From Ruditapes philippinarum (Eukaryota): a stretch of 64,000 bases of DNA. The stretch covers positions 62,001 to 126,000 of the forward strand of contig NW_026860451.1 of NCBI RefSeq assembly GCF_026571515.1, in the 5' to 3' direction. The notes below the pieces were generated by a model, which saw nothing but the letters and a program-made list of their open reading frames with translations, searched no databases and had not been told where the DNA came from. Of this stretch, positions 31,588-57,413 are shown piece by piece (positions within the stretch are counted from its first letter, which is position 1; each line of letters starts with the position of its first letter). A program made the translations under genes and the position numbers.

Positions 31588-33093
31588 ATGGCTATGTTAA
31601 GGATAAACAAGGATCTTGAAATGGAATCCAACATCATGCGCCAACAGAAGCTCGCAGCTGGCCAGTCTCAACTAGATCGCCACATCAACAGTGTCCTATT
31701 ACAAGCGTCTCTTAGAAGACCACCAGTTTCAGTACGAATGTCTGGGAGTAGATATTCAGGAAGCAATAAAATAACGTCATCGGCGATTTCCGGTGCACAA
31801 AAAGCCGCATCAAAACTGGTATGGTCGAAAGTCATGCTTTCGAAAGGATCGACCGTAATGAAATCAACATGCTCAACACGGATGATTAAATCGCCAAAAT
31901 ATGTCGAGAAGGCTTTTCCAAATCACAAGCACGATGTAATTGAAACAAGTATTATTAGGTTGGTACCGAAATATGATTTTGAAATTCCTTCAGATCAAGA
32001 ATTTGAAAAGCTTATCAAAAATGCCTATCCAAAACCTGTGAGAAATCAAAACAATTTCGAAAACACATGTCTTACTAAATCAGATCATTCTTGTAAAAGT
32101 GCCGTAGAGTCAAACATTTATTGCAATGGTGAACTGAACAATGAATATGATAGTAATGTTAGCAAAAGACCTGATAATGAATTCCGTCAACAACTTGAAA
32201 ATGAAAACCAGTTGAAAGCCAATGTAGAGAAAGACAAAATAGTTCTTCGCGGTGTATCGGAAGAAATAAAAAATCAAGCATTGCTAACACACGACACAGA
32301 TACCACTTTGCCTGGTCATGAAATCAAAACAAGCTTTAAAACTGAAATTGATCTCGACGAAATTTATGATATTGGTTTGTTTTTTGAAGTCTGTAGCAAA
32401 CTAAATAAAGAAAATGTCAACGAAGTTTATGATATTGGTTTGTTCTTTGAAGTCTGCAACCAATCGAAGAAGGAAGAAATCGACGACATTTATGACCTTG
32501 GTTTATTCTTTGAAGTCTGCAACCAGTCAAAGAAGGCAGAAATCGACGAAGTTTATGATATTGGTTTGTTCTTTGAAGTCTGCAACCAATCGAAGAAGGA
32601 AGAAATCGACGAAGTTTATGATATTGATTTGTTCTTTGAAGTCTGCAACCAATCACAGAAGGCAGAAATCGACGAAGTTTATGATATTGATTCATTCTTA
32701 GAAGTCTGCAACCGGTCGAAAAAGAGTCATTTCGACGACGTATTTGACATTGGTGTGTTCTTTGGTTTATGTTGTGAAGCCTCCGAATTAAAGAAAACGA
32801 CAGAGTTTGATAATGCAGTTGATGATGATCCAGTATTTGATCCCAGTAACAATAACAGTAAAATCGATGTCGGCAGTGTGTTGGGACACACTCTGACTGA
32901 CACCACCAGAGAATGCACAGTTGACACTACAAGGCATGAAGTTAACGAAAATAACGAAGATGATAGCAACATGATTGATGCACAAAACATGGATATTGCG
33001 CCTTTACCTCGTCTTGATGAGAACATAGACTTTGGTGAGGATATGTTCGGAATTCTTGGAGTGTTTTGCAGAAGTGGTTTACATCAACTGTAA
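31588..33093 (+). CDS. Uncharacterised ~500-aa protein: basic Ser/Lys-rich N-terminus, seven 21-aa acidic repeats (DEVYDIGLFFEVCNQSKKEEI), acidic C-terminus
   Basis: 1.5-kb ORF in AT-rich DNA; acceptor ttacag 2 nt before the ATG at 31588; in-frame 63-bp repeats; GTAAGT overlapping the stop. Confidence 0.75.
   Translation: MAMLRINKDLEMESNIMRQQKLAAGQSQLDRHINSVLLQASLRRPPVSVRMSGSRYSGSNKITSSAISGAQKAASKLVWSKVMLSKGSTVMKSTCSTRMIKSPKYVEKAFPNHKHDVIETSIIRLVPKYDFEIPSDQEFEKLIKNAYPKPVRNQNNFENTCLTKSDHSCKSAVESNIYCNGELNNEYDSNVSKRPDNEFRQQLENENQLKANVEKDKIVLRGVSEEIKNQALLTHDTDTTLPGHEIKTSFKTEIDLDEIYDIGLFFEVCSKLNKENVNEVYDIGLFFEVCNQSKKEEIDDIYDLGLFFEVCNQSKKAEIDEVYDIGLFFEVCNQSKKEEIDEVYDIDLFFEVCNQSQKAEIDEVYDIDSFLEVCNRSKKSHFDDVFDIGVFFGLCCEASELKKTTEFDNAVDDDPVFDPSNNNSKIDVGSVLGHTLTDTTRECTVDTTRHEVNENNEDDSNMIDAQNMDIAPLPRLDENIDFGEDMFGILGVFCRSGLHQL
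32344..32775 (+). repeat. 63-bp coding tandem repeat, ~7 copies
   Basis: GAAATCGACGAAGTTTATGATATTGGTTTGTTCTTTGAAGTCTGCAACC repeated in frame. Confidence 0.92.
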
Positions 33094-34019
33094 GTATTAA
33101 TAACAGAAAATTCAGTTTGTCAGTGTGTAGTATAACAGATATATCTTTGTTATGTTAGATAGGGTTGATTCACAAATGTGTGACTAAGTATATCATAGAT
33201 TTCACAACATTACGGTACAATTACAGGATCACATTTTATCTTATTCTTATATTTTTTTTAAGAATTAAAGCAAAACCCACAAACTTCTTTTCTGGTATAC
33301 CTTAATTCATTGACGTCGTATAACTGTATCTCTTATAAGATTCTAAAAATTCTAAATAATGTTTTTGAAAACGTTTTGCTTTAGTATATACTTTTTGATA
33401 ATATCCTACAATTACCTGGTGCGTTTCATCATATTACGTTGTACAAAATAATCATTTAATGTTCAGAATAATTAGATAATCGCTTGTTCCGGTATACACT
33501 AAATATTGCTGTCCGTGTAATAGACAGGACTGATTTTGAGAATTTGGCTCTCTATAAGATGCTAGAAGCATTTTGTAGTACAAGTGGTATGTTGGTGTAT
33601 TTTACCTATTTAAGGTATGCTGAATCCGATAAAGGTGGATACCGAATTGAAAAACTTGATCTTGACCATTGAAAGGGCCATTTAAAATGCCCACTAAAAT
33701 GGCCGCCAAATTTCTTTATCATAAATAATGATGATATATCAATTTTTCTATAGGCTAATAATTATAATAGAAATATAGAAGTAATATTAAAGATGGTACT
33801 GAAAATTTTAAGGCATTTAAACGTAAAAGACCTATATTTAGGGTTTACGAACACTACTACACTCTTTCTGTCCTATCTGCTAGATATAGAGCTTTCGTGT
33901 ATTTTATCTGGCACTCTACTCTGGCTACTCATATTATACTTGCACAGCGCACGTATGTGTGACGGGATTTAAACGTGCGCATTAAACGTGGGATTTAAAG
34001 GCACCTGTCTCTGGGTTTT

Positions 34020-35200
34020 GGTGTTCGTTTTTCTGTTACCGGTTGTTGTCTCTGTTCGCTTGTTGTCAGTTCTTCTGTTATCGGTTATTGGTCGTGATTT
34101 TCGTTCTTCAATCGGTCCTGGTCTCAGTTCTTTTGTTGTCAGATGTTCCGATTTCTCGTCTCTGTTATTCTGTTATCGGTCCTCGTCTCTATTTTTCTGT
34201 CATGAATGCTCGTTTCCTTTGTCTTGTTGTCAGTACTTCTCGTATCGGTCCCTGTCTCTGTTCTTCTGTTATCGGTCCTCGTCTGTGTTAGTTTGTTGTC
34301 AGTTCTGTTATCGGTCCCTGTCTCTTTTCGCTTGTTGTCAGTTCTTCTGTTATCAGTCCCGGTCTTTGTTCTTCTGTTATCTGTCCCTATCTCTGTTCGC
34401 TTGTTGTCAGTTCTGCTGTAAGCGGTTATTCGTCTTGATATTCGTTCTTCAATTGGTACTGGTCTCAGTTCTTTTGTTGTCAGATGCTCCGATTTCTCGT
34501 CTCTGTTCTTCTGTTATCGGTTATCGTTTTCGTTCTTCTCCGTTCTGCTGTCATCGGTTCTCGTGTCTATTCTGCTGTAATCAGTCTTGGTCTCCGTTTT
34601 CTTGTTTTCAATTGTTCTGTCATCGGTTTCCGTCTCTGTTATCCGTCCTCGTCTCTATTTTTCTGTCATGAATGCTCGTTTCCGTTGTCTTGTTGTCAGT
34701 TCTTCTGTTATCGGTCCCTGTCTCTGTTCTTCTGTTATCGGTCCTCGTCTGTGTTAGCTTGTTGACAGTTTCTGTTATCTGTCTCTGTCTCTTTTCGCTT
34801 GTTGTCAGTTCTTCTGTTATCTGTCCATATCTCTGTTCGGTTGTTGTCAGTTCTGCTGTTAGCGGTTCAAGTAACTGTTCTTCTTTTATCGGTCGCTTGT
34901 CTGTGTAGCAATGTTCTGTGGTGTACGTCTCTGTTCGGTTGTTGTCAGTTTTCCTGTAATCGGTACCTGTCTCTATTCGCTTGTTTTTTTTTCTTCTGTT
35001 ATCGCTCCCTGTCTCTGCTCTTCTGTATTCGGTCCTCGTCTCTGTTCGCTTGTTGTCAGTTCTTGTCTCCATTCTTCTTTCTGTTATCGGTCGTTGTCTT
35101 CGGTCTTGTACTTTCGGTACTTGTTTCCTGTTCCGTTAAGGTCTTCTCTTGTTTCTATCGTTGCCGTCATTCTGTGCTGATGTCCTGGTTTGTCAGTCTT
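34020..35200. repeat. Degenerate pyrimidine-rich complex minisatellite (CTGTTATCGGTCC / GTCTCTGTTC / TTGTTGTCAGTTCTT modules)
   Basis: Shuffled short modules; direct duplication of ~34164-34410 at ~34630-34865. Confidence 0.85.
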
Positions 35201-35220
35201 GTAGTCATTTATTCGTTCAG

Positions 35221-35294
35221 TGGAGTAGCGGGGGATCGAACTCACGACCCCTTGATTTGAAGGCAGACAGTGTTACCACTGCACCATAGCGCCC
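35221..35294 (-). mobile_element. tRNA-like (SINE head) sequence with A/B boxes and TCA in the anticodon loop
   Basis: Minus strand reads GGCGCTATGGTGCAGTGGTAACAC...CTTCAAA...GAGTTCGATCCCCCGCTACTCCA; stems are poorly paired. Confidence 0.65.
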
Positions 35295-37890
35295 GCTCAG
35301 AATAATAACTATGTTTGAAAGTCCTTTATACTTTAAAAACTATTTCAATGGCAAACAAAGGGTGTATTACAATTATATTTTAACACCTCTACTATGTAGC
35401 CAACCCACGTGACTTTTTTATATTGGCAAAGAAAATATTACTCGATTTATTACAAGTAATATTTTTAAAAATAACTTTGCAGTTACTTTAAGATATTCCA
35501 GACATTTATTGGAGGGTACCCGGAATTCTAATGTATATCAAATGATGTGATAATCTTCTTGTAGAATTTTCTTAAAACCGTGACTGAATTCCAAAATTTT
35601 CGAGAGCTGCCATGGTATAACAAGCACACGTAGCAATCTCCCGGTTTCAGACATTTCATAACTCGATGAAAATATGGTGTTGTTATTGTTGTTATCAAAA
35701 ACTTACATGCATCATACATGTGTAATGTTCACAATGTGCTGAAAAAACGGCTCTTTATTAATTTCAACATTTCAGCAAGTGACACATTTTATATCAGAAT
35801 GGGACAGAAATGTTGTTCTAACCATTTAAAATTTAGGATTTGTAAATTTGTAAGTTGGATATTTTTTACCTAGTTTGCTCATCACTTAATTCACATTTTT
35901 ATATATAAACCTGAGGTACAGAAAATAGACAGAAAACAACTGTCATAGATTGAGATAGAGCCATAGTGTCGTAGATATTTGGGTTACAAAAGGAGTTTTT
36001 GATCCTGATAATGTTTTAAGTACATGTACAGGATAAACATATTATAAGCCAATATTCTTAAAATTTTAACTGCCTTTATTCATATTTTTTTTTTAAATAC
36101 GTGCAATTATGTAATTATTTTGTCTTTAGTTAATAGTTTCTGGAGAAAAGGCTTAACAAAGGTGATATCTTTTATTTTATAGATAAATTTTATAATGTGT
36201 CACATGTCGACTTTAAAAAAAAATTGTGGGGGTTTATCGCATACTTAGTCCCGCTTTTGCATGTTGGAACATCTATATTTTATTTGTTTGTATACACAGC
36301 CTAATTGCTTATTTGTATAGTCTTATTTTATTGACCTGTCAATTGTGAATACCTTACAACACTCATTGAAATATTAGATTCCACTTAGATTTCGTGAGTA
36401 AAGTTTACGAGAAATAATATGGAGTACATGTATAAAGAGGATATTTGTTTGTCTGTGTGTAAGATGAAATTTTATTTCATCGAGTGGGCTTTAAAAACAG
36501 TATTCCAACGAGTGGCGTAGCACATCTGACACAACAAACAAACACATTTTCTTTTTATTTTATGCTTAAAAATAAGTTAAAACGAAATTTCCTTGATATT
36601 AACTTTAATATTAAAATCTGTTTTCCCCACTGGTAGCCTCTATTATGTACATGTATTAGTCGAATTTCTCATAAAATACAAGAAATCTTGGGCTGAAAAA
36701 TAAGTTCGACAATCAACGTTAAATTGCGATGATATTATTCATTTGAATGATCGCTTATTTTAATAATAAAAACAAACAATTTTAGTAGGAGAAAAAGTCC
36801 AACCATCCATCCATATTTCTGTTACTTACTGCGAATTTATATCAGACCTGGCTCTGTTAAATGTAAGCGGCGGCCATTTTTAAAAGATGTGTATTTCAAG
36901 GGAGGAAAATAATTGTGTTTGATTTAGAGGGATATCGTTTGGATTTGTTAGTCATACACCTTTTTAAAAGAAAGAAAACTTATTTGAGGATTGTAACAGA
37001 CAATAAATAAGTGTTGACAGATGTGTAAACATTTAAAAAGTGGCTAGGAAATTGGAAACTTGGAATTGTTGAAAGGCTGCCTTATTTCGTTTTAACGAAA
37101 TATAAAATCTTTATTACGAAATATTGATTCGTTATTACGAAATATTATTCCGTAATTACGAAATTCGTAATAACGAAATATTAATATGATATTACGAAAT
37201 ATTTATTCTGTGATTATATTTATTAAGAAGGATTTTGAAACTAAGTACATGTATATTGTTAAATATAAGTCAAGTAAACAAAACATAAAAAAGTGATTTT
37301 TTTTTCAATTTTAGTCTTATACCTTAACGCGCTAGTAAAACAGTACTGTGTATAACTGTTAATTGAGCCATTATGCTTATAATCGTTATATTTGGTGGCC
37401 AATCTCATTAAAATCTGATCATATTGAATAATCGTTTGATTTTGACAAGAATTATTAATTTCATCATATTGAATCATAGTTTTAATGACCTATTTTTAGT
37501 ATTTTTAAGCGGCCATTTTGAATTGACCTTTTGAAGGTCAAGGTCAATTTTATTTTCTTGGTATCCACCCACATCGTCCTCAGCATACCCATATTAGGTT
37601 CAAACACTCAAGATATAACTTGTACTATAAAATGCCTCTAGCATAATCAGTCCTGTATATAATATAAACTTGCAAATTGGGTCTTAAAACAAGTAAATGT
37701 TATAAATTCATATAATGTACAAGTATATACAGTTATACAGTTGGTGTAAACATACATATATTCCATTTCCGTAAAAATGAAATAAAATCAATGAAGAAAT
37801 CATTGGTGAATGACGATAAGCCAAATTTCATTGCATATCTAATTTTATTTTAGTTATGTTATGTTAATAATCAGGCATGCATGTATGTGT

Positions 37891-38809
37891 GAGTGTAGGA
37901 CAAAAGCCCTCCCGGACAAAAGCCCTCCCGTCAAAAATTGACAAGGCGGACAAAAGCCCTCCCGTGAAAATGACAGGGCGGACAAAAGCCCTCCCGTAAA
38001 AATGACAGGGCGGACAAAAGCCCTCCCGTAAAAATGACTTGGCGGACAGAAGCCCTCCCGTGAAAATACAGGGCGGACAAAAGCCCTCCCGCAGCAAATA
38101 CATATATGTACATTAAATAGTTTGTATTTTCAATTCAATGCACTCAACATATTAAAATTGTAATCATGAATATTTTTGTTTTCCATTGGCATAAGAGTGT
38201 TTGTATGAGCTTGAGTACATTCCTGACTGGCATCTGAATAATAAGTACTAAAATCTGTAAGTGCATATTTATTCACGTAAAAATGAAGGATTACTCACAT
38301 GTAAAGTTATGATTAATAGAGTAATAAATGATGAAAAGAAGTTAAAATTAACTAAAATTAAAAGTCCAAGTGCCTTGTAATGAGTCAATTACTTTAGAAA
38401 GTGACCTTTTTTTAAACGACATTCGTGTGAAAATATTACCTCGCTAAACATTTAATTTCTGAAAGGTATGTTCTGAATGAAAGCTGGTTCTAGCTAATAA
38501 AAATACTTAGACCAAAAGAAAACAACAACAAATATATATGTTACAAATTTAATATCTTAAGTGCGTTGAAAAAACACAGGTATGTAACATAAATATATAT
38601 TTTGTTACGGGAGGGCTTTTGTCCGCCTTGTTAATTTCACGGGAGGGATTTTGTCCGCCCTGTCATTTTCACGGGAGGGCTTTTGTCCGCCCTGTCAATT
38701 TCACGGGAGGGCTTTTGTCCGCCTTGTCATTTTCACGGGAGGGCTTTTGTCCGCCTTGTCATTTTTGGACGGGAGGGCTTTTGTCCGGGAGGGCTTTTGT
38801 CCGTTTCCC
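37891..38809. mobile_element. Mutator-like (MULE) foldback non-autonomous element with 9-bp TSD TGTATGTGT
   Basis: Inverted arrays of ~31-bp GGACAAAAGCCCTCCCG repeats at both ends, AT-rich core, G...C termini, and identical 9-mers at 37882-37890 and 38810-38818. Confidence 0.88.
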
Positions 38810-39589
38810 TGTATGTGTGTTTCATAGATTATTTTCCGTTTTTTTTTCCAGGTACAGCGATGTCCAGGATGTCAATGCTTGAATCGTGCACACATTTACA
38901 TAAAACATTTTTATTGTTATAAATCATTAAAATTAAAAAAGGATAAGATTATGTTTGCTAAACGAAAAATAGTTTGGGTTGTTTTTTTTCGTCCAAAGTT
39001 TTTAAAAACCAAAACCGACGTCAACCAAAAAGAACTTGAATTGACGCGCACTGATCATATACATGTATGATGTTTATACATTTTAATAATTCATTGAGCT
39101 GAAGCCAGGCAATAGTGAAACCATATAGTAGAAAAGCATAAAAACCGGTTGTGATGTTTCTGCTAATATGTTTTTTTCTACATAATACATGGAAACATGT
39201 ACACTTGCAAATATATTTTACGTTTTTAAGACAATTCGTAACCGCAAAATATAAAAAACACTTCTATCAAAAAATCTTGAGATGTAATTCTGATAAGCCT
39301 CTTATTTTCACATAACAATATTAAATATGATGAAACTAACGACAGAAGTGTAACATGTCAATTTTAGCGAACTAATATGACCAGCATTTTCATTGTTAAT
39401 AGAAATGAATACATGTACATAGTAAAACATGAGAATTTACTATTGTTACATGTATACCAACTGAAAATAGCGTATAGACGGTACATATTAGGGGGAAAAG
39501 CTATTGTTTATACTTGTACGACTTGTGACCTGCCCGTGCCACAAGTATACACGTTGTTGAGTTTTTACTCATATTGACTTGTAAACTCG

Positions 39590-39790
39590 GATCACATGGC
39601 TAGCTTCCTGCTTTACTAGTAGAGGAAGTCCTCAGGTAATCCTCCGTTTATTATTTCATTCAATAGTGGGCATCTAAGTAGAACCATCGACATTCGAAAT
39701 TCTATGAGGTAGATGGGCTTTCTCACATAGAAAAATGTAAATTTACTAACAGGATTCAAAACCACTACGCCAGGACAATCATGCAGTACA
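39590..39790 (-). mobile_element. Degenerate SINE copy
   Basis: GCTTTACTAGTAGAGGAAG...TTATTTCA...GTAGAACCATCGACATTC matches the 10.6 kb and 42.1 kb copies. Confidence 0.5.
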
Positions 39791-42023: not shown

Positions 42024-42058
<35 letters not shown>

Positions 42059-42104
42059 CTTGTTTTTTTTTTTTTTTTTTTTTGGGGGGGGGGGGGGCAG
42101 AGTG

Positions 42105-42320
42105 GGGGTTTAACTCACACCCACACTCCAATGGTCATATGATGACTTTACAGCTTTACTAGAAAAGGAAAACCATGTGTGGAACCTCCGACATTCCGTA
42201 AGCTAGATGTATAATTTCCTCACATGAAATAATTTAATTTCCCTGACGGAAACTGAACCCAGAGCGGTGAGGGCCAAGTGGTTTGAAGTCAACGCCCTAA
42301 ACCAATATGTCACAACGCCA
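42105..42320 (-). mobile_element. Degenerate tRNA-derived SINE with adjacent poly-T/poly-G tract (42026-42097)
   Basis: Minus strand: GGTTTAGGGCGTTGACTTCAAACCACTTGGCCCTC..GGGTTCAGTTTCC head, then CATGTGAGGAA..CTTACGGAATGTCGG body. Confidence 0.6.
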
Positions 42321-42615
42321 AACAATGAAACTTTCTTAACAACTCTTATGAATATATCAATGAGACAAAAGAGAAAGGACTCGAGCAACATTTAGACATG
42401 GAACTATAATTTGGAGTTTCAGGAATATGAATATTTTAGATATCAAAATAAAAAATAATAAAATAATAAATTACGAAACTGCTCGACTGTCTCTATAATA
42501 ACTGGTAATATTGTTTAAATATATTTTCTACTTTTGAATGAATACGTACAGTATTCATATGTTAGGGGCTTTAAAATATTAATATAGACCATATTTTATA
42601 TAATTCACAGGGACA

Positions 42616-43848
42616 ATGACAGAGTTTTCTGATAAAGTTAACATTACAATTTGTGGTGGCGGGAATGGTGCCCATACTCTGGCAGGAATATCATCTCTGG
42701 TTCCCAACGCTTGCGTTACTGTTGTTGACGTGTTCGAAAACGAGGCTGAAAGATGGACGAACGCTTTGGCCAATTACGGTTTCACTGTGAGGTTCAGCAA
42801 AGACGTAATGTTACACCAGAAGCCGGGGAAAGTCAAATTCCGTGTAACAAACGATGTGGAAAGCGTTGTTCCCCATTCAGACATTTTAATCATCTGTGTC
42901 CCGGCTTACACGCACGAAATTTATCTAAATCTTATATCACCTTACGTACCAGAAACGTGTCCAGTTGTAGGAATGCCTGGTCAACCAGGCTTTGAGTATC
43001 AAGCATTGACCATCTTGCAGGAACACGGCAGAAAATGTAAAGTAATGTCTATTGAAACGCTTCCATGGGCATGCAGAATATCCAAGTATGGACAGGAAGT
43101 AGACGTTGTCGGGACAAAAGAAGAAGTTTGCTATACTCTGATCGACAAGCTGTCAAAGGGCAATCCGTCCAAAAGGTTGGATCCTGTTTCGGTGCTTCAA
43201 ACAATATTAGGCAAGAAACCCCAACTCGCCAAAGAGGAGAATATGCTGAAGTATACTTTTCTCTGTAGGCCGACCATTCATCCTCCGATAATGTATGCAC
43301 GATGGAAAAATTGGGACGGTAAGCCTTTGGATAAGCCGCCATTATTCTACCAAGGAGTTGATGAAGACTCAGTTAGGTATATGGACGGCGTCACGGATGA
43401 ATCTGTCAAGATTGCCGCTGCTGTTACAGAGATATTTCCAAGCATGGATTTCTCGGGAGTTTCAACGATGCAAGAATGGTTACTGGATCATTACACAGAT
43501 CAGATCACCAACAAACAGACGCTCCTGACTTGTTTACAGACAAACAAGGCGTATGATGGCCTTTTACACCCAACAACAAAAACAGCCGATGGTAAGTATG
43601 TGCCGGATTTCACCTACCGCTACATTAGAGAAGATGTTCCCTATGGATTGATAGTGGTACGTCAAATAGCCGACTTCGTTGGAGTGGAAACGCCAGTAAT
43701 TGACGAAATCATCTTGTGGGCACAAGAAAAGCTGGGAAAACAGTTCATTCAACATGGAAAGCTGTGCAAACTGGACCGTACCGACGGCAGACTTCCTATG
43801 ACCTATGGTATTAATACAATCGAGGATTTTTTCAACTTTTTCAAATAG
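42616..43848 (+). CDS. Opine dehydrogenase 2, paralog of 24703-25935, 410 aa, single coding exon
   Basis: CGGGNGAHTLAG, EAERW, PGQPGFE, IETLPWACRI, IHPP, PLFYQG, YRYIREDVPYG. Acceptor ttcacag lies 5 nt before the ATG. Confidence 0.95.
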   Translation: MTEFSDKVNITICGGGNGAHTLAGISSLVPNACVTVVDVFENEAERWTNALANYGFTVRFSKDVMLHQKPGKVKFRVTNDVESVVPHSDILIICVPAYTHEIYLNLISPYVPETCPVVGMPGQPGFEYQALTILQEHGRKCKVMSIETLPWACRISKYGQEVDVVGTKEEVCYTLIDKLSKGNPSKRLDPVSVLQTILGKKPQLAKEENMLKYTFLCRPTIHPPIMYARWKNWDGKPLDKPPLFYQGVDEDSVRYMDGVTDESVKIAAAVTEIFPSMDFSGVSTMQEWLLDHYTDQITNKQTLLTCLQTNKAYDGLLHPTTKTADGKYVPDFTYRYIREDVPYGLIVVRQIADFVGVETPVIDEIILWAQEKLGKQFIQHGKLCKLDRTDGRLPMTYGINTIEDFFNFFK

Positions 43849-44696: not shown

Positions 44697-44827
44697 TGTG
44701 TGCCTTAAAACGTTACAGTACTTAGTGCAGAAAAATAAGTTTGTGTGCCTTAAAACGTTACAGTCCTTAGTGCAGAAAAATAAGTTTGTGTGCCTTAAAA
44801 CGTTACAGAACTTAATACAGAAAAATA
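44697..44827. repeat. 45-bp tandem repeat, ~3 copies
   Basis: TGCCTTAAAACGTTACAG at 44701, 44746 and 44791. Confidence 0.9.
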
Positions 44828-47021: not shown

Positions 47022-48989
47022 TATGGTGGCATATTTCTGCCACCAGATAACCATATAACTAACTAGTTAATTAAAAGGTTAACTAGTTACGTAACTAGTT
47101 AACCTCTTAATTAACTAGTTAGGTATCAAGTTAACTAATTACGTAACTAGTTAACCTGATATCTAACTAGTTAGTTATCAGGTTAACTAGTTCCGTAACT
47201 AGTTAACCTCTTAAATAACTAGTTAGGTATCAGGTTAACTAGTTCCGTAACTAGTTAACCTCTTAATTAACTAGTTAGTTATCAGGTTAACTAGTTGCGT
47301 AACTAGTTAACCTCTTAATTAACTAGTTAGTTATCAGGTTAACTAGTAACGTAACTAGTTATTTTTTTCTATAAAGAAAAGATCATAACGGGAAATAAAT
47401 GCATGTTTGTGCCCGCAACTGCCATCCCTTATTGTCAGCTTAATATTAAGAGGTTAACTAGTTACGTAACTAGTTAACCTCTTAATGAACTAGTTAATTA
47501 ATAGGTTAACTAGTTACGTAAATACTTAACTAGTTAACCTAATAATTAACTAGTTAATTAAGAGGTTAACTAGTTACATAAATACTAAACTAGTTAACCT
47601 CTTAATTAACTAGTTAGTTAAGAGGTTAACTAGTTACGTAAATACCTAACTAGTTAACCTATTAATTAACTAGTTAATTAAGAGGTTAACTAGTTACGTA
47701 ACTAGTTAACCCGTTATCACCTATCTATAAATAGCACTGTTTTGCTCCATTGCATTGATACACAGTCCCACTTAAGAAAGTCATTGCAGACATTAGAAGG
47801 GAATTAAAATCGGCTCCATACATTGATAAAATGGTTTCATATATTGTAAAAATGAATTAATATATTGATAATTCGGTTCCATACAAGGACATCTGGTTCC
47901 ATACATGGCTACTTTGGTACAATATATTGAAGTATTGGAATCATATATTGAGAAAATCAACTTTTATATTGCTAACTCGGTTTCATACACTGACGGTATG
48001 GTTTCATATATTGTCACTGTGGATTGATATAATGGATTCCGGTTAAATAAGAAGGTGTTTTCAAGTCATTTATAGTCGAAGTGAACTTATATATTATCCA
48101 AATGGTTAAATAAATTGAAAACGAACAACATCAGACAGCCATGGCTGTCCATAGACAGGTGCCACAGGGTTGGTGGTTATAATAAGATACATCAATAAAA
48201 CCTTTGATTAGTTTATGTTTTATAACATGCTTTTTCATGGGTCAGTACAATTGATTACTTTAAGGCCCGATTACGTTTCATTTAGGTATGTATATTGTTT
48301 ATATAAAAATTGGATATGTATTAGTCAGACAATGAAAGTCTTAACTTTCAAAGCTCTAGACAAATAAACAAATACACAGGAAATTGACCCGATGCTGTGA
48401 GACACGTGCAATAAACAAGGGAATATCTTGCCGCTCAAGCCAAATTGCTATTTTCGCGAAAATAACCCTATTTTCGTATTTTAGTTATACCCCGCGCATA
48501 AGCGGGCAGTACGGGTATTCCAAATATTATGCAATATCTATTTAAAGATAAGTGATAACGGGTTAACTAGTTACTTAACTAGTTAACCTATTAATTAACT
48601 AGTTAATTAACAGGTTAACTAGTTAGGTATTCACGTAACTAGTTAACCTTTTAACTAACTAGATAATTAAGAGGTTAACTAGTTAGGTATTTACGTAACT
48701 AATTAACCTATTAATTAACTAGTTAATTAAGCGGTTAACAAGTTACGTAACTAGTTAACCTCTTAATTTTAAGCTGATAATATAATAAAAGGATGGCAGT
48801 TGCAGGCACTAACATGCATTTATTTCCCGTTATGATCTTTTATTTATTGAAAAAAAATAACTAGTTACGTAACTAGTTAACCTGATAACTAACTAGTTAA
48901 TTAAGAGGTTAACTAGCTACGTAACTAGTTAACCTCTTAATTAACTAGTTAGTTATCAGGTTATCTGTTGGCAGAAATATGCCACCATA
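47022..48989. mobile_element. Foldback DNA element with TATGG...CCATA ends, 6-bp TTAAAC duplication and TAACTAGTTA satellite arms (IS3EU-like)
   Basis: TIR TATGGTGGCATATTTCTGCCA.CAGATAACC; mirrored arms (47022-47726 / 48546-48989). TTAAAC precedes a 7-nt TATGGTG duplication on the left and follows the right end. The empty site is visible at ~45680. Confidence 0.88.
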
Positions 48990-51634
48990 TTAAACAGACA
49001 GATTTTTATAGTTTCATAACGCGTATTTATCCATCTTTTCCGGAGTAATGTCACTCACAAACTGATGTAATAGAATAATTGTTTCCAAATTTAGGATTCA
49101 CTGGCAAACTTATTGTAAGATAAAATGTGTGACTATTAAGAAGGAAAGTCAAATCAAAGAAGCATAAGCTTGATATAGGCTAATCAGCATGCATTTTTTT
49201 GTGTGTGCAAAATTCCCATTGATTAAAATGTTTACGTTATTCAACTTATTTTATTATTCAAATTTCAGATGATATCTTAAGTTGAATAAATTCACACTCT
49301 GGGGTTTGTTTGTTGTTTTTTTGGCAACCAGGCAACTAACAAAGGCAATCTACAAAACAAAACTTTGCAAATGACAATCTACAGAAAGTGCAGTGAATAA
49401 GTTCTCTTTTAAATTAAGACCCGGTACCATTGGTTAGAGTAGTAGGCCTTGTTGGCCCTTCTATCACTATTTAAAATTAGTTTTATAGGCACATTGTGTG
49501 CCCATCTAGAGAAACTTGAAAGAATAAAACCTTTTCGTTATTGTCGATGTTTCAGTACTTTTACCTGGTTTTTATCGTTAAATATGATATAAATAAATTA
49601 ACTTTTCATTTAGAATGGATTTAAAGAATTTGACTCAATTTAAAGAATATTTGTACAATGTATCTTATTCAACCTGAATTGCATTTGTGTAAATTCATCT
49701 TGGAATATTAAGTAAAAAATGTTAAGATTTTGTTATATTTCATGAGTAAAGGGAGATTATAAAATAGAGAAAAACAGAATCCCTAAAGAAAGCCCAACAC
49801 GACAAAATTGAAAATGTTGCAGGCTCGGTTTGATTGAGCGTGTTCATGGACGGTACTGGAAAGTACAAGTTACCGTCCACGCCCCCTAGCACCGGCTTTA
49901 GCAGAATTCAACATTTAACACGAGCTGGTACAATTTGGAATTTTGAAACATCCGAAGATGTGTTCATATGACGGTTATCATGGAACCTCAATGTGACACG
50001 TAAATGCCATTCCATGAAAAGCGGCATATGGTCCCCAAGTAAAAAAATGCGTGTGCCCTAAACGAGAAACTAAATAAAATGGAATTTTGAAAGGGGATCT
50101 GAGGTTATGAAGCCTGCATATCACAGATAAGACGTCAAAAGACAATTTAAAAAGCAGGCAACATATCCTAAGGGTGATTACATGTATACAGTATTCAAGT
50201 AGGAATACTGGAACCACCCAAGTTGAAAAAGTCCAAATAGAAGAAACTAAAAATACCACACAACAATTATGTCGTGCTGAACGATCTTCAAGGAAAGATA
50301 TAAAACACAAAACATTTACTAAAAGAACGTTCGAAAACGGCAAATTGAAAATGTTGTAGGCTCGGTTTGATTAAGCCAGTTCATGAACGCGGTAGTGGTA
50401 AATGCAAGCCACCGCCAACGTCAAAACATATTTGTGACGTCATCCTTTGTTGTATATGTACATTGATATGTCTATAATAAACTATCCAGTATTTACCGAT
50501 TATTTTGAGATTGGATACTTTTCAAGCCAATAACTATAAAAATAAGACAGTTAGCTGTGTACTTTCGAACATTTTGCAGCAGATGTGGTAACTTTGATGT
50601 ATCACAGAGAGACATAATCAAAAACAACACTTTAATTGACCGATATTCATTTGTTTCTTTCATGTTATTTAAAAAAAATCATTTATCATTCACTCACGCA
50701 TGAAACAGCCTTATAAAGATTTACACTGTTGATGTGAACAGTTAAATACTTTTTTTTAGGAAACAGGTTTTCATAGCGCGTATTAATGCATCTTTTCCTG
50801 AGTAATTGATGTCCTAAAACTGTCCATATTGTAAGAGAATAAGACGCATCGATCTGCCCTTTCTCTCACATAATGAAATTAATATTAATTTAAATGAAAG
50901 ATACTTATTAACCATTTTCACAATTTTTAAAAATATATATAGTATGAAAAAATTTCGATTAATTCAACCTACAATGATCATTTGACTTTATTTTCTAATG
51001 ATTGTACAGTTCAATCGAAACTGATTTAACTTAAAAATTAGACCTTGATAAGACTAGATGTCTACTGACAAGCCAAATATCTTCATTTCCTACATTTTAA
51101 GTAGGAGACTGCATTACTAGTGCCTCGTCCAATATATGTTTTGCAGATGTGTAGGAGTCCAACAGAATCAGTATTGTATCAAACAATGTATAAGGACCTA
51201 ATTCCTAATTTCAAACATCCATTCTCTTTACCGTTTTGACATAACTTCTTGATCTCGAGTATAATATAAATCTAATATGTTTTGTTTTTTTTGGACACGG
51301 GAAATGAAAACGAGGCTTAATTAATATGGTTTGATTCAATAATGATTTCTATTGGAGCATCACATAGTGAAATTGTTGGTTATATCTTCTGACCAGGTGT
51401 GAGATAAAATTTGATATTTTTAAAAGAAATAGATATTTCTGTATGGGAAATGATTTTTAAAAATTGTTGTTCACTTTGATTCCTTACCTACAATAAAATT
51501 TCAGATAAGTTGATAGATATGGTCATTTTCGTGAAATAACTATAATTTTGCAGACATGAACTTTGAAATTATTGTATTTACCAAAGAACAACATCAATAT
51601 ATGCAAGATATATAACAATGCTCCCATGGTTACT

Positions 51635-51700
51635 GTGTGTGGGTGAGCGTGGGCGTGTGTGTGTGTTGGTGTGTGTGTGCGTGCGTGCATGCGTGCGTGC
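51635..51700. repeat. (GT)n/(GTGC)n microsatellite
   Basis: Simple repeat run. Confidence 0.85.
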
Positions 51701-53870
51701 ATTCAAGTTGTGAAAGAAATACCTTTGTGTGTGTTATATTGATTTATATCATATTAGTTACCAGATATATATCACTAAAATCCTAAACCTATTGGGTTTT
51801 CATTTCAAGAAAACAACAAAGGAAGCATCCTCGGTAACCCAGGCTATATTAACCGTATATCAGTATTACATGTATAGTATACCGTGGGTTCCGACGAGTA
51901 ATTGGAAGCACAGGACTGGGTGAACGTCTGACACTTGCATGCTTTCTAACATGTTTTACTTCTGGTTTGTTAAATAATTGTTTTACAGGCACATTGTGTG
52001 CCCATCTAGAGAAACTTGAAAGAATGTAACCTTTTCAATATTGTCGAAGTGGGAGTGATTTTTCCAGGTATTTATCATACAGTCTGATATAAATAATTTG
52101 GCATTTCAGTTAGAATAGATTTGATAATTTGACTTTGTTTAGATAAAATTTATAAATATTTCAGTCTGAATTATATTTATTATATTTGTTTAAATTATCT
52201 TTAACATTTAAATTAATAAATGTATAGATTTTGTTATATTTCATGCATAAAGTGAGGCTATAAATCGCAAAACACATTTCACCGTAAGAGACTTAGTTAC
52301 GTTTTTCACAATTTTTATCGAATTGTGTGTCACAAAGATTCGTGAATGAATCTCTATCTGGTTGATAAGAAAAAATTCTATCAGTTGAAACGTATGAAAT
52401 TGCGCTTCAAGATTTGCGTGCATTTTTGGGGTATATATAATAAATAAAAATATCCACTGCAGTGAAACATATTTTTCGTATTTTCATTGGTGCCTGACTA
52501 CTTTCTTTGTTTTTAAGCCAATTAATTTAAAGGGGAAGTCTTTGGAACTATACGTCAAAGAAGAGAAAAAAGTATATAAAAAAGAAAATGCATTTTTTTC
52601 TATAAATCGGGATTTATTTTCATCTCGTGGTATGAAAATTCTTATATTTCACGCCTGGCTACTGCCACTGGATGAAAATAAATCACATATTTAAAGAAAA
52701 AATGAATATTTATTTTAGTGGGAAATTGCATTATATATTCGCGTTATTTTGACGTCATTTTCGACGTCATTCAATACAAACGTTTGTTTTTATTTGCGTC
52801 CTAGCAACCAGATGTACCGTTAACATCCGAGTGAAGAGACTTTTAAGATGGAAGCGGAAGAGTTTATTTCGTCATTTTCTTACCATTAAACATACAGAAG
52901 TCGTCGTATTTGGAGTCCCATGGAAGACGCACAAAATCCATACATATATCAACAGATATGTGTCGACCAAGGGATTTGTAAGTCGATAACTTTTATTCCA
53001 TTTTTTACTGTTTCATTTCATGTAGTTTCTTTATTTTCTAGATCATCGAAAAGAGGTCTATGTGAATGAATATTTTACATTTTAATTTTAGATAGTGTTA
53101 ATTGGCCGCATTAAGGGCTTAAAGGCCAATTTAGCCCAACATCAATTTATTTTTGTTTCCTTAATCCTTTTAATTTTTGCTGTCCCGTTACAGTTTTCAA
53201 GGGCTCTACTGGTTTCCTAGCAGTTTCCGGCTACAAATCGCACATTTTAACAAATAAAATAAAAATCAGTCTACGGAGGGGTACAAATTTTGACAGGACA
53301 AAGTTAGGTACCTGTCCAGCATTGCCATATGTTTAATGTTGCACTTTCATTTTACTTTTTAATTTGAATATAGGCCTGAAATGTAATACCTTTTTCACCT
53401 TTATTCAAATATTCAAAGCAGTTTTCCGGACCCTTTTATTTTGAAAATAATTCAGCACCATAAAGCAATGTTAAGATGGTTTTAACAAACAAACAGAACT
53501 TCACAACCTTTTCCGTGTCGTCTGAAAAAATATTTTCCGAAGTATTGATTTACCTAAAATGGGGTCTTAGTTATTGTGCATGGATATTCAAGCTACAATT
53601 CCCCAGGTGTTGCTTATATGAAAAGTCGCAAGTTCTCTTATGTAACTTTAAATAACAGGCAAAACTTCAAAACATATAAATCGTTGTACTATTTTAAATG
53701 CTGTTTAGCATAGAAAACAAATGTCTCTCTGATTGATGAATTAATGTGGACGCCTTACTGGTAAAAATAGACTGTACTGGACGAAAATGATAAACGGCCG
53801 GAAAACTGCTAGGGGACGGAAACTGCTAGGAAACCAGTACTGTATAGCTGAGCCATTTTTTAGCATTTAG

Positions 53871-54423
53871 CAAATATATACGGAATATTATGTTGTAGTA
53901 GCTTTCTGAGGCTCTGTATTTTGCTACGAGCAGCGGTGGAAAAATAAAATATACCTATAAATTTTCTCCCTAAAATACACGCAAATATTGAAGCGCAAAT
54001 ACGCTTCAACGGATAGAAATTTCCGTATTATGTTAGTGACAAATACGGTACCATATATGGAAGTGTCGGACTATTTTTGACGTTGGTTCCGATCTTAGCT
54101 TTGTATAACGTTGCATTTGGAAACGGGAACCAAAATTATTAAAGGCGTGGCCAGTTTTCAAGAATTACGTATTCATCCGTCAGTCATAAATTTATTTCTT
54201 GACAACTACATTTCATTTTCTGAATAAAACGAAATGGTATATAATAAAAGGAAAATTATGTTGTAGTAGCTTTCTGAGACTATGTATTTTTCTATTCGCA
54301 ACGTTGGAAAATTGATATCTTGCTCGACCTACGGTCTCGCGAGATATCAATTTTCCATCGCTGCTCGTAGCAAAATACAGAGCCTCAGAAAGCTACTACA
54401 ACATAATATTCCGTATATATTTG
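53871..54423. mobile_element. MITE-like element with ~70-bp near-perfect inverted ends and an internal third copy of the arm (54250-54310)
   Basis: CAAATATATACGGAATATTATGTTGTAGTAGCTTTCTGAGGCTCTG... and its reverse complement at 54350-54423. Confidence 0.75.
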
Positions 54424-55284
54424 TATGGGTTTTGCATATTTCACCATCCATTTAATTTTCTTTAATTTTTTTTTAAAGTGCCACGCCAAAATTTTGTCCT
54501 AACTTAAATCACTCTGATGTTATATAAATCTAGATTTCTTTAACATACCAAAACTATAAGATAAAAAGTTTTTGAATTTTAAAAAACCTGTTTTGGGCTC
54601 TGTTACTTACATTATTGACCGAAAGCAATATGTACATTTTAAAATAAAAAAAATATTTTCAGCAACTAAATGTCAATGCTTTTAAGAAATATTTCCATCT
54701 TAAATATAGGAATATGTGCAAAATTACATATCATTTGCTCACTTCTTTTATCCAGAATAATTATTCTTGTGAAAAATGACTCAAAATTGAAAAAAAGTTG
54801 TAACTCATATCCGCCCAAAATAGAACAAAAACAAACAAAACAAATTTCAACATATTAGATTAAATGAGTATGTTTCTTAATTATATTTTGCATATAAGTA
54901 AATAAGCTGTTATACCACTTAATCTACCGTGTTTGATTTGTATTCTTAAGTTAATGTAATATATTTAATATATGTATTCTTAAGTTAATGTATATATTTA
55001 ATATATGTATTTATTACATGCTTTTCGGTGGTTTATAGAAATATATCAGTGATATAAAACTGGTAATTTCACTGTTTGAAACAGTGAAATTACCACTTTG
55101 ATAATTTCACTGTTTTGAATTTAAGCCCCTTACGTTGTTTCAGTTAAATACCAGCGTGCACAGTACTGGGTACCAACTTCATGGCGTGACGTCGTAAATG
55201 ACGTCACGTTGTATTATTATTTGGCGCGCTTTTCATTAAGTATTAGGTTTAATGTCTTTTTAAAACGTTTCTTTGCATATAATA

Positions 55285-55452
55285 AAAAGAAAATTTGTTT
55301 AGTTTAGTTTAAGATCGATATATATTTCACCTTGTGAACACCAAAAGTTCATATTTCACTCGTGGCTGCGCCACTCGTGAAATATACCTTTTGGTGCTCA
55401 CTCGGTGAAATATATTCCGATCTTACACTGAACTAAACAAATATCCTCTATA
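55285..55452. repeat. Long imperfect palindrome centred on CACTCGTGGCTGCGCCACTCGTG; related remnants at ~28770-28935, 36430-36560, 52600-52710 and 58250-58400
   Basis: Arms TTTGTTTAGTT..AGATCG..ATATTTCAC / GTGAAATAT..CGATCT..AACTAAACAAA. Confidence 0.65.
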
Positions 55453-55762
55453 TATCCGGAAAAATATATGTTCAAACCAAGAAACTCAAATAATCTTTGT
55501 ATGAATATTAAAGGCTTTTTTGGCTCATACATAATCATATTTTACATTTAGCAACATTTATTATGCATTTTCTTTTCAACGTACACATAGTAATGCTCCG
55601 CATTGCAAGTTTAGAAATACCAACCTCGATACTTGGCGCCAAAAGAAACCCGGCACTGCCGACAATTACTTGTAGGTTTTCCTACGCTATTCCTTGCTTT
55701 GCCCAGTCTGGTTTATAAATTAATCAAAATTGCACTCTATAATAAATTTTTATTTTACAGAC

Positions 55763-56584
55763 ATGCCGATCACTGAAAACACGGTAGAAAAGCCACCGGA
55801 GAAGAAGAAGAGAAAAAGAAGAAGGTCTCAAAAACAATGGGAAAGGTGGATGAAATACCGTGAAAAGAAATACCTGGAACGTGTTCTAAACAAGGGCTGT
55901 TTCACTGAACAAGATTACAAAAAACACCTAGATGAAAAAAATCAAATATCTGTTGATCCTCCGATGGTTTGGGTTCCTGTAGAAGAAACAGACGTAACAA
56001 ATTGTCATGACGTCATCTATTACCCAGTGTATTACCCATATCCTGTATATTATCCTACAGACGCGGCCATTCAATGGCAACATCAAAATATTTCAGCTAT
56101 TGAGTATAGCGAGTGTTTACAGTACTCGGATCAGATGTATTACGAACCAGGATTGACGTCTGGTAATTCTAGCGAAGATTACGAGCAGGTTCAACAGGTA
56201 CTTTCACTGGAGCAATCATTTGGAAATACGTGTACCGCTAGTGAAAGCGATGTTAAGCTCGAGCAAGTTGCCAACAAAGTGGATACGCCATCAGAAACAG
56301 ATATTGATACAACATCCGACTTGTCCGCTGACGAGAAAGCCCCTGTGTTTCTTCCAAGTCCTTCAAGTCTTTTCGCGCCACATTTACCCGCCACAACACG
56401 TGACCAGGAGGATTTCTGTAACATGAAAGACATGGAGGAAAGCCTTGAGCGACTGTTATGTACGGAGTCTGAGGTAGTAGGTGAGGAGTCTGAGGTAGTA
56501 GAAGACGTTTCCGACGATGATGACGAGGCCGACGGAATTTTGTCATTGTACGCTTCAAGTGGTATTCATGTCAAGTTTAAGTAG
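55763..56584 (+). CDS. Uncharacterised 273-aa protein: basic NLS-like N-terminus, Tyr/Pro-rich segment, acidic C-terminus
   Basis: Acceptor ttttattttacag 2 nt before the ATG at 55763; KKKRKRRR; YYPVYYPYPVYYP; GTAAGT immediately after the TAG. Confidence 0.72.
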   Translation: MPITENTVEKPPEKKKRKRRRSQKQWERWMKYREKKYLERVLNKGCFTEQDYKKHLDEKNQISVDPPMVWVPVEETDVTNCHDVIYYPVYYPYPVYYPTDAAIQWQHQNISAIEYSECLQYSDQMYYEPGLTSGNSSEDYEQVQQVLSLEQSFGNTCTASESDVKLEQVANKVDTPSETDIDTTSDLSADEKAPVFLPSPSSLFAPHLPATTRDQEDFCNMKDMEESLERLLCTESEVVGEESEVVEDVSDDDDEADGILSLYASSGIHVKFK

Positions 56585-57413
56585 GTAAGTTACTTAAGTC
56601 TAAATACAATGTAGATAAAAAAATCAATCGACAAGTGCATAAATTTAACATGTAGGCATACCACGAATGAAAATTTTTGCACATATTGCATGTACCTGTG
56701 CTTTTGAGCAGACGATATTTTAACGTATTGCCAGACTGCACGGATATGTATATGTACTGGTGACATAGGCATGTACTGGTGACATAGGCAGAGATTTTAT
56801 AATTATATTTTAGTGCAATCAATGATGATGAAAAGTATACAAGAAGAAATAAAATTTGCAGGATTAAAAACAGATTATTTAGGAAATAGATCTTGAGTTT
56901 GAGTTTTATAGTTAAAGCCTGAGTCATTAATTACTAAAATCTGAACGACATACCGTGCTATATGTATAACACCGAGCACACAAGATCTATTTCCATTCTG
57001 ACATGTCAAGAAAAAAAATAAAGGTGTACTTTATTTTTGGTGGTTAAATTTCTTTTCGCCTCAATATTTCTGGTAGCAACGTTCTTCAAAGGTTTTTCTA
57101 GTCGGTTGAAAAAAAAAAAACTCTAACTAATCCTAAATATTCTTTATTTTTGTTATTATCCAATGAATATTTTACATTATCATTATATCTTACATGAATA
57201 TGAATAATTTTTTAACCTTGACAAGGTATGCTTTCTTAAACTTATTAAACAAAAAAGGTAACATTTCCTTTTTTGCAGGCGACATGCAAAAAGAAGAGGA
57301 CGTATCAGAAATTTGGCTTGAATGTATGAAATGACAAAATAAAAAAAAATCTGCCTTGGAAACTATAGATGTGGCTTAACTTATTGATAAAATTTCTTTC
57401 ATGAAGATTATTT

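What the first reader, a model, noticed from the sequence alone, without database searches (positions are those of the whole stretch)
31588..56590. Two unrelated-looking orphan ORFs share exon architecture and a C-terminal motif: possible undescribed gene family paired with opine dehydrogenases
Seen: ORFs 31588-33093 and 55763-56584 both start as cag|NN-ATG and are one long exon running basic N-terminus to acidic C-terminus. They end in the same motif (EDMFGILGVFCRSGLHQL vs DEADGILSLYASSGIHVKFK) and have GTAAGT at the stop (33090; 56585). The rest does not align by eye. Gene order alternates ODH1-orphan1-ODH2-orphan2, all on the + strand. Inference: an old duplication of an [ODH + orphan] unit, in which a fast-evolving disordered protein keeps only a short terminal interaction motif.
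Basis: partly seen in the sequence, partly recalled or inferred. Interest (0 to 1): 0.8.

Follow-up and report, generated by a model that had tools for sequence, protein, structure and literature searches.

The report
Clam-specific disordered-protein family, shared end motif
The two "orphan" genes really do share an end motif: it marks a large, undescribed family of mostly disordered proteins in venerid clams (over 100 loci in this Manila clam genome), but the family has no general link to the neighbouring opine dehydrogenase genes.

Summary
The window is Ruditapes philippinarum (Manila clam).

The motif is not chance. A profile built only from other genes of this genome, with both orphans and their close kin left out, finds each orphan at its last residues (hhalign P about 1e-6). 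It matches 109 loci genome-wide at E<1e-3.

The motif is an acidic run followed by [F]-G-I-[LM]-x-[VIL]-[YF]-x-x-[ST]-x-[IL]-H. It always lies at the 3' end of a big coding exon, with an intron 5, 8 or 15 nt after the His codon.

- **Orphan 1** is NCBI LOC132760138. It belongs to a subfamily with 21-residue tandem repeats.
- **Orphan 2** is transcribed (contigs from 4 studies). It belongs to a subfamily with a basic N-terminal helix and, in its relatives, a PAM2 (poly(A)-binding-protein docking) motif.

Named relatives occur only in Ruditapes and Mercenaria, and all are "uncharacterized". AlphaFold models are largely disordered.

The ODH pairing is not supported. No other family locus lies on an ODH contig, and the two orphans fall in different subfamilies.

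My best reading is that these are disordered adaptor proteins whose conserved end is a docking peptide for an unknown common partner.

The parts
31586..33089 (+). Orphan 1 main coding exon (ATG at 31588). NCBI LOC132760138 of Ruditapes philippinarum, subfamily A.
   Evidence: ORF. 100% identical to P0003 (510 aa). Acceptor ttacag| and donor CT|GTAAGT.
32354..32764 (+). 63-bp tandem repeat x6.5 inside orphan 1, giving seven 21-residue units (core VYDIGLFFEVC). Paralogues carry 17-21 units.
   Evidence: TRF. Units listed. Paralogue ORFs. No detectable relation to the end motif (hhalign probability 0.08%).
33046..33084 (+). End motif of orphan 1 (FGILGVFCRSGLH), preceded by an acidic stretch. The intron starts 5 nt after the His codon (phase 2).
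38852..38882 (+). Terminal mini-exon of orphan 1: completes the Leu codon, adds 9 residues, then TGA.
   Evidence: The tail of P0003 maps here after a tttttttttccag| acceptor. This rests on the NCBI model; I did not lay RNA on it.
52818..52977 (+). 5'UTR exon of orphan 2. The end is exact (donor GTAAGT at 52978). The start is approximate (up to 160 nt of contig lies 5' of the junction), and the exon may begin elsewhere.
   Evidence: RNA contigs carry 70-160 nt of other sequence before 55761. The 18 nt next to the junction match once, at 52960-52977, followed by gtaagt.
55761..56584 (+). Orphan 2 coding exon (CDS 55763-56584, 273 aa plus TAG), subfamily C. N-terminal basic helix motif (KKKRKRRRSQKQWERWMKYREKK) and a degenerate PAM2-like stretch.
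   Evidence: ORF. Contigs of 4 runs from 4 studies begin to match exactly at 55761 and stop at 56582-56585, then continue in other sequence; one retains the intron to 57220. Relative P0002 at 59% identity. N-motif kin.
56531..56569 (+). End motif of orphan 2 (DGILSLYASSGIH) after DDDDEA. The stop is 5 codons after His, and the intron starts 15 nt after the His codon.
24703..25935 (+). ODH1, a single-exon opine dehydrogenase. It is a neighbour, not part of the family.
   Evidence: Pfam Octopine_DH 5.1e-28.
42616..43848 (+). ODH2, a single-exon opine dehydrogenase, 60% identical to ODH1. It is a neighbour, not part of the family.
   Evidence: Pfam Octopine_DH 6.2e-31. Own-genome search.

Best explanation
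Both ORFs are expressed, protein-coding members of a large gene superfamily that appears restricted to venerid clams. Its proteins are mostly intrinsically disordered and have diverged beyond recognition. The exception is a roughly 14-residue peptide near the C-terminus: an acidic run followed by [F]-G-I-[LM]-x-[VIL]-[YF]-x-x-[ST]-x-[IL]-H.

The gene plan is also conserved. There is a 5'UTR exon, one big coding exon that ends with the motif, then an intron 5-15 nt after the His codon, then a short last exon.

Orphan 1 belongs to subfamily A, which carries an array of 21-residue repeats. Orphan 2 belongs to the subfamily group (C/D) with a basic, NLS-like N-terminal helix. Its relatives also carry a PAM2 peptide, the known docking site for the MLLE domain of poly(A)-binding protein.

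Inferred mechanism: the end motif is a short linear docking motif that brings every family member to one common, still unknown partner or place. The variable body supplies other contacts (PABP in the PAM2 subfamily; multivalent repeats in subfamily A). The proteins would therefore act as adaptors.

What is shown: family membership, motif conservation at the peptide level, gene structure, transcription of orphan 2, and the lack of ODH linkage. What is inferred: the docking function and any PABP link for orphan 2 itself, whose PAM2 is degenerate.
For: **Family and motif**
- Own-genome searches with the two ORFs reach the same third group of loci.
- ORFs from 15 loci end in DDDDDDSPFGILSVYCRSGIH.
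- The leave-out profile A3 gives 136 hits, 109 at E<1e-3, and recovers both orphans.
- hhalign gives P 1.1e-6 and 8.1e-7, at the very ends of the two ORFs.

**Peptide-level selection**
- Gly, Ile, Leu, Ser and His codons differ synonymously between subfamilies.

**Intron after the motif**
- It lies at His+5, +8 or +15 nt in all subfamilies.

**Expression**
- Spliced RNA contigs from 4 studies cover orphan 2.
- Orphan 1 has an NCBI model.

**Disorder**
- AF2 mean pLDDT is 59.5, with only the N-motif helix confident, for P0017.
- It is 26 for orphan 1.
- There are no Pfam domains.

**PAM2 in relatives**
- PF07145 scores 21.7 bits in P0017, above the cut-off of 20. It scores 15.6-15.7 bits in two others.
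- The best PDB hit of the family profile is the Paip2 PAM2 peptide 1jgn_B.
- The published consensus is LNxxAxEFxP (PMC7356810).

**Range**
- Named hits are only from Ruditapes and Mercenaria, all 'uncharacterized'.

**ODH independence**
-.
Against: - No partner and no biochemical evidence exist; the function of the motif is pure inference.
- The Phe before G-I-L is missing in orphan 2 and a few others, so one uniform binding mode is not assured.
- Orphan 2 lacks a scoring PAM2: it has a 2-residue insertion, and its relative P0002 has lost the key Phe. It also lacks the FGYxYFSxxNL tail that spliced models of its relatives carry.
- In the genome-wide leave-out search the two orphans are only borderline (E 0.04 and 0.35). 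Significance rests on the small prior search space and on position.
- The AF2 model of orphan 1 used only 4 sequences, so its low confidence is weak evidence of disorder.
- The taxonomic restriction rests on one profile search plus names for about half of the hits.
Confidence: 0.72

Rival explanations
1. One reading: an ancient duplication of an [opine dehydrogenase + orphan] two-gene unit, with the orphan functionally paired to ODH.
For: The order ODH1-orphan1-ODH2-orphan2 on one strand is real. Both orphans belong to one superfamily. An old local duplication of the orphan gene cannot be excluded.
Against: - The other ODH-bearing contigs (C8340, C15213, C5620) have no motif hit, and about 100 motif-bearing contigs have no ODH.
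- The orphans sit in different subfamilies and intron classes, each with closer kin elsewhere. ODH1 and ODH2 are mutual closest paralogues.
- There is no colinear similarity beyond the ODH coding sequence.
- Orphan 2 has its own 5' exon 9 kb from ODH2.
Confidence: 0.07
2. The shared motif is a chance resemblance between two unrelated ORFs.
For: Pairwise BLASTP reaches only E 0.039 over 12 residues, and nothing else aligns.
Against: The independent profile hits both at P about 1e-6, at the same position (exon end, just before a donor). More than 100 further loci carry the motif. It is conserved in the 59%-identical relative of orphan 2 and in all orphan 1 paralogues.
Confidence: 0.02
3. The motif is spread by a mobile or repeated element (exon capture or shuffling), so the 'family' is a set of unrelated genes that each acquired the same terminal cassette.
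For: About 25 hits are 37-38-residue mini-exons. The two of these loci that I compared, from different contigs, are 98.7% identical over 531 nt. The motif sits next to an intron in every gene and is attached to N-terminal regions that do not align with each other.
Against: - In most subfamilies the motif is in the same exon as the variable body, not in a separate cassette.
- Motif codons differ widely between subfamilies, so the copies are old.
- No transposase or reverse-transcriptase domains occur in the ORFs.
- Subfamilies also share other blocks: the N motif in C/D, and FCNSVDAFLRH in B/H.
Confidence: 0.1
4. The conserved end is a self-association (cross-beta or amyloid-like) or degradation/localisation signal, not a docking site for one partner.
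For: - The pattern G-hydrophobic-hydrophobic-x-hydrophobic-aromatic is strand-like.
- Relatives carry a second, similar element at the very C-terminus (FGYxYFSxxNL).
- One gene has the motif twice in tandem (L071).
- The motif is terminal in many unrelated bodies.
Against: AF2 gives no confident strand or hairpin there, only a low-confidence helix. There is no Asn/Gln-rich pattern like known amyloid signalling motifs (own knowledge). No experiment bears on it.
Confidence: 0.12

Closest known systems
PAM2-motif adaptor proteins (Paip2, ataxin-2, Tob, LARP4/4B, GW182), which dock on the MLLE domain of poly(A)-binding protein
   Same: Relatives of orphan 2 (subfamily D) are short, mostly disordered proteins. 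They carry L-R-[AP]-E-A-x-E-F-V-P-R-S, which fits the published consensus LNxxAxEFxP (PMC7356810). Pfam PAM2 scores above its cut-off in P0017. Like these adaptors, they combine PAM2 with other short motifs.
   Different: There is no sequence similarity outside the 12-residue PAM2. The basic N-terminal helix and the end motif are not known from any PAM2 protein I could find. Orphan 1 has no PAM2, and orphan 2 has only a degenerate one that does not score.
Taxonomically restricted, tandemly expanded gene families of bivalves (for example the IAP expansion reported for the hard clam genome, PMC7831173)
   Same: Many copies lie in tandem clusters on several contigs, with fragments and pseudogene-like pieces. 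The family is found in Ruditapes and Mercenaria.
   Different: Those expansions involve recognised domains. Here no Pfam domain exists, and the only family-wide element is a 14-residue peptide.
Ustilago Upa2, a large disordered multi-PAM2 protein with a conserved C-terminal motif (bioRxiv 10.1101/455378, listed; details are from my own knowledge)
   Same: The design principle is the same: a disordered scaffold, PAM2 contact(s) to PABP, and a separate conserved terminal motif needed for a second contact.
   Different: It is unrelated in sequence, comes from a fungus and is a single gene. The terminal motif is different.

Membership tests
Venerid end-motif superfamily (unnamed; defined in this report) | Acidic run followed by [F]-G-I-[LM]-x-[VIL]-[YF]-x-x-[ST]-x-[IL]-H, scoring with a profile built from other subfamilies | tested here: met
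   hhalign of A3 against orphan 1 gives P 1.1e-6 and against orphan 2 gives P 8.1e-7. Both are recovered genome-wide at E 0.35 and 0.040.
Venerid end-motif superfamily (unnamed; defined in this report) | Motif at the 3' end of a large coding exon, with a GT donor 5-15 nt after the His codon | tested here: met
   Orphan 1 has CAT CAA CT|GTAAGT (+5). Orphan 2 has CAT GTC AAG TTT AAG TAG|GTAAGT (+15). The same two classes occur in the other subfamilies.
Venerid end-motif superfamily (unnamed; defined in this report) | Transcribed and spliced as predicted | tested here: met
   For orphan 2, contigs of 4 studies start at 55761 and end at 56582-56585, and the 5' exon donor is at 52978. Orphan 1 rests only on the NCBI model P0003; no reads were laid on it.
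PAM2-motif proteins (Pfam PF07145) | LNxxAxEFxP peptide scoring above the Pfam gathering cut-off (20 bits) | tested here: not met
   Neither orphan 1 nor orphan 2 has a PF07145 hit at E<=1. Orphan 2 has DLSADEKAPVFLP with a 2-residue insertion. Relatives do match: P0017 scores 21.7 bits (met); L036 scores 15.6 and P0022 15.7 (below cut-off).
PAM2-motif proteins (Pfam PF07145) | Binding to the MLLE domain of poly(A)-binding protein | not testable with these tools
   This needs a binding assay.
   ODH lies on C8938, C8340, C15213 and C5620. Motif hits outside C8938 are on none of these. Only the best 150 of 229 candidates were scored.
Transposable-element proteins | Transposase, integrase or reverse-transcriptase domain in the ORF | tested here: not met
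   No such Pfam hit occurs in the orphans or in seven representative family ORFs.

The most novel reading that the evidence does not exclude
The end motif is a new protein-docking (or self-assembly) module. Together with PAM2 and a basic helix, it defines a clam-specific, >100-gene system of disordered adaptors that tie poly(A)-binding protein and mRNPs to a lineage-specific partner. This would be a large, rapidly diversifying layer of post-transcriptional control, or perhaps immune or germline control, not seen in model animals.
Probability: 0.2. Interest if true: 0.7.

Novelty: new variant of a known kind. Interest (0 to 1): 0.52.

Why it matters
Bivalve genomes hold thousands of "uncharacterized" lineage-specific genes. 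Here a 14-residue peptide and a conserved intron position join more than 100 of them into one family, which pairwise searches cannot see. That gives a handle for annotation: a profile that can be run on any clam genome. It also gives a concrete experiment, namely finding the partner of the motif. One branch carries a bona fide PAM2 motif, which points to poly(A)-binding protein and mRNA control. The finding also removes a tempting but unsupported link to anaerobic metabolism through the opine dehydrogenases.

Tried and rejected
**Searches that gave nothing useful**
- Pfam on both orphans and on seven representative ORFs of other subfamilies gave no domain. A weak ThsA_Macro hit (E 0.0038) in one subfamily's N-terminal block was not followed up.
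- The family profile against PDB sequences gave only the Paip2 PAM2 peptide, at E 0.62.
- The ESM Atlas could not read a new sequence. For the stored relative P0017 it gave only chance-level rows.
- Two literature searches found no description of the family.
- The scan's earlier findings, searched by words and by sequence, held nothing.

**Ideas rejected**
- That orphan 1's 21-residue repeats are copies of the end motif: hhalign probability is 0.08%.
- The candidate acceptor at 57278: no joint goes there.
- An FGYxYFSxxNL tail exon in the window: none was found.
- LIR, SIM, FFAT, PIP-box, ABBA and NES readings of the motif and repeats, considered from memory: none fits all subfamilies, so none is claimed.

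**Structure prediction**
- AF2 of orphan 1 gave pLDDT 26. The model is unusable, so no fold search was run.

I rebuilt the leave-out profile from locus references instead.
Only a sample of subfamilies was therefore fetched.
Exons were handled apart, and the only spliced sequences used are database models.
Full report
**1. What is there**

The window is contig C8938:62001-126000 of the Ruditapes philippinarum (Manila clam) assembly.

ORF 1 (ATG at 31588) follows the acceptor ttacag|TT and runs to 33089. There the donor CT|GTAAGT splits a codon. It is 100% identical to NCBI 'uncharacterized protein LOC132760138' (P0003, 510 aa). The last 9 residues of that model map to a mini-exon at 38852-38882, behind a polypyrimidine acceptor.

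ORF 2 (ATG at 55763) follows ttacag|AC and ends with TAG at 56582-56584, directly followed by GTAAGT.

Both proteins run from a basic first quarter (pI 10.7 and 9.9) to acidic later quarters (pI about 4-5). Orphan 1 contains a 63-bp tandem repeat x6.5, which gives seven 21-residue units. The two opine dehydrogenases (24703-25935 and 42616-43848) are real single-exon genes (Pfam Octopine_DH).

**2. Is the shared motif more than chance?**

Pairwise BLASTP finds only 12 residues at E 0.039.

Six-frame searches of the clam's own genome changed the picture. The C-terminal part of orphan 2 weakly hit many long ORFs on C6800, C9111, C2128, C12706, C1192 and C14127. The C-terminal part of orphan 1 hit two of the same loci. 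Reading those loci showed a third group of genes, all ending in DDDDDDSPFGILSVYCRSGIH followed by a donor. That sequence bridges the two orphans. More subfamilies followed.

I then built a profile (A3) from nine genes of seven subfamilies, leaving out orphan 1, orphan 2 and their close kin.
- Against the whole 1.4-Gb genome it gave 136 matches at E<=1, with 109 at E<1e-3.
- It recovered orphan 2 (E 0.040), orphan 1 (E 0.35) and orphan 1's paralogues (E 0.012-0.04).
- Compared directly, A3 aligns to the last residues of orphan 1 (484-500, P 1.1e-6) and of orphan 2 (251-272, P 8.1e-7).

The codons of the motif differ by many synonymous changes between subfamilies, so selection acts on the peptide.

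In every subfamily an intron follows almost at once:
- 5 nt after the His codon in A, B and H
- 8 nt in I
- 15 nt in C, D, E, F and G

The motif is therefore real. It is an acidic run followed by [F]-G-I-[LM]-x-[VIL]-[YF]-x-x-[ST]-x-[IL]-H.

**3. The two orphans within the family**

Orphan 1 (subfamily A) has paralogues on C6216 (a tandem cluster), C4144 and C15416. These are 63-76% identical in blocks and carry 17-21 copies of the 21-residue unit instead of seven. The units do not match the end-motif profile.

Orphan 2 (subfamily C) shares an N-terminal block, KKKRKRK-x-SQKQ[WL]ERWMKYREKK, with genes on C12653, C13624 and C7963 (subfamily D). Those genes also carry L-R-[AP]-E-A-x-E-F-V-P-R-S. 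This fits the PAM2 consensus LNxxAxEFxP (PMC7356810).
- Pfam PAM2 scores 21.7 bits (cut-off 20) in the relative P0017. It scores 15.6-15.7 bits in two others.
- The best PDB match of the family profile is the Paip2 PAM2 peptide, although at E 0.62.

Orphan 2 itself has only a degenerate version with a 2-residue insertion, and its 59%-identical relative P0002 has lost the key Phe.

Spliced database models of D-type genes continue into a tail ending in FGYxYFSxxNL. No such exon exists in the window.

**4. Expression and gene model of orphan 2**

Contigs from four runs of four studies (one on record as RNA-Seq) begin to match exactly at 55761. They carry 70-160 nt of other sequence upstream. They stop matching at 56582-56585 and then continue for 12-101 nt in sequence that does not lie within 55101-61100. 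One contig is spliced at 55761 but reads through to 57220, so it retains the intron.

The 18 nt next to the 5' junction occur once in the window, at 52960-52977, followed by gtaagt. The model is therefore:
- a 5'UTR exon ending at 52977
- the coding exon 55761-56584, including its stop
- a 3'UTR intron starting at 56585

The acceptor proposed at 57278 has no support. NCBI's protein set held no model of orphan 2 within the length range searched.

**5. Structure and range**

AlphaFold2 on the relative P0017, with a 13-row alignment, gives mean pLDDT 59.5. Only the basic N-terminal helix is confident. Orphan 1, with 4 rows, gives pLDDT 26, which is uninformative but consistent with disorder. No Pfam domain is present.

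A profile search of 1.84 billion representative proteins found 20 hits at E<=1e-3. The named ones are all 'uncharacterized protein' of Ruditapes philippinarum or Mercenaria mercenaria, both Veneridae. Two literature searches found no description.

**6. The ODH link**

ODH copies in the genome lie on C8938 (this window), C8340, C15213 and C5620. None of the other contigs with motif hits is among them.

ODH1 and ODH2 are each other's nearest paralogues. The two orphans belong to different subfamilies and intron classes, each with closer kin elsewhere. Beyond the ODH coding sequence the two supposed units share only dispersed repeats. Orphan 2 has its own first exon 9 kb downstream of ODH2. The alternating order is best read as coincidence, or at most as an old local duplication within the orphan family alone.

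**7. Mechanism**

Shown:
- a conserved terminal peptide under purifying selection
- variable, disordered bodies
- PAM2 in one branch

Inferred: the peptide is a short linear motif that docks all members on one partner or site, and the bodies supply other contacts (PABP for the PAM2 branch; multivalent repeats for subfamily A). I put this at about 50%.

A self-association or targeting/degradation signal is the main alternative. Spread of the motif by a repeated element deserves a look, because about 25 hits are mini-exons and the two such loci I compared are 98.7% identical.

**8. Limits**
- Contigs, not raw reads, were laid, so expression levels, strand and exact transcript ends are not known.

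Noticed in passing
window 52751-52773: Two TGACGTCA (CRE-like palindrome) copies 12 nt apart lie about 50-70 nt upstream of the inferred start of orphan 2's 5'UTR exon. This could be a cAMP/ATF-type promoter element.
   Followed up: no
window 37898-38068 and 38632-38802: A foldback structure: 171-nt inverted arms (94% complementary), each built of 32-bp tandem units. It lies inside orphan 1's last intron and ends 50 nt before the terminal-exon acceptor at 38852.
   Followed up: partly
window 33964-35260: A strongly T-rich stretch on the + strand (AT skew -0.40) made of 27/39/42-bp tandem units, with long ORFs on both strands (227 aa on +, 150 aa on -) and no Pfam hit. It is probably a minisatellite in orphan 1's intron.
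   Followed up: partly
window 57408-57657: A short element with extremely high contig depth in all four runs (up to about 180,000). Copies also occur at 30780-31111, just upstream of orphan 1. It looks like an abundant dispersed repeat (SINE-like).
   Followed up: no
G000:C13889:457250-457850 (L079) and C8975:6900-7500 (L080); about 25 similar loci: A 37-38-codon mini-exon encodes ...DPFGIMSAYCNSEIHS with its own acceptor and a donor at His+5 nt. The two loci compared are 98.7% identical over 531 nt, so a recently amplified element carries the family motif.
   Followed up: partly
L071, L073, L074, L078, L081 (C10027, C2806, C1850, C1302, C13193): Subfamilies E-G share an N-terminal block, DILISPNNDD[IV]IIP[IT]SATFDK.VLHIGIG, that starts at an exon boundary. 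One copy has a weak Pfam hit to ThsA_Macro (E 0.0038). L071 carries the end motif twice in tandem.
   Followed up: partly
L036 (C7963:66500-72500): A 1030-codon open frame has the N motif and PAM2, then about 90 copies of an 8-residue unit (VDNDMPSS-like), then the end motif. This is an extreme repeat expansion within the family.
   Followed up: partly
window 4971-5390 (+), 16788-17867 (+), 11731-12162 (-): A C1q-domain exon (E 1.1e-23), an AMP-binding enzyme exon (E 4.3e-25) and a Tc3-type transposase HTH remnant (31.1 bits, just under the cut-off of 31.5).
   Followed up: partly
window 47056-47710 and 48562-48963: Arrays of 52/60-bp units built from the palindromic word TTAACTAGTTAA, in two blocks about 1 kb apart between ODH2 and orphan 2.
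   Followed up: no
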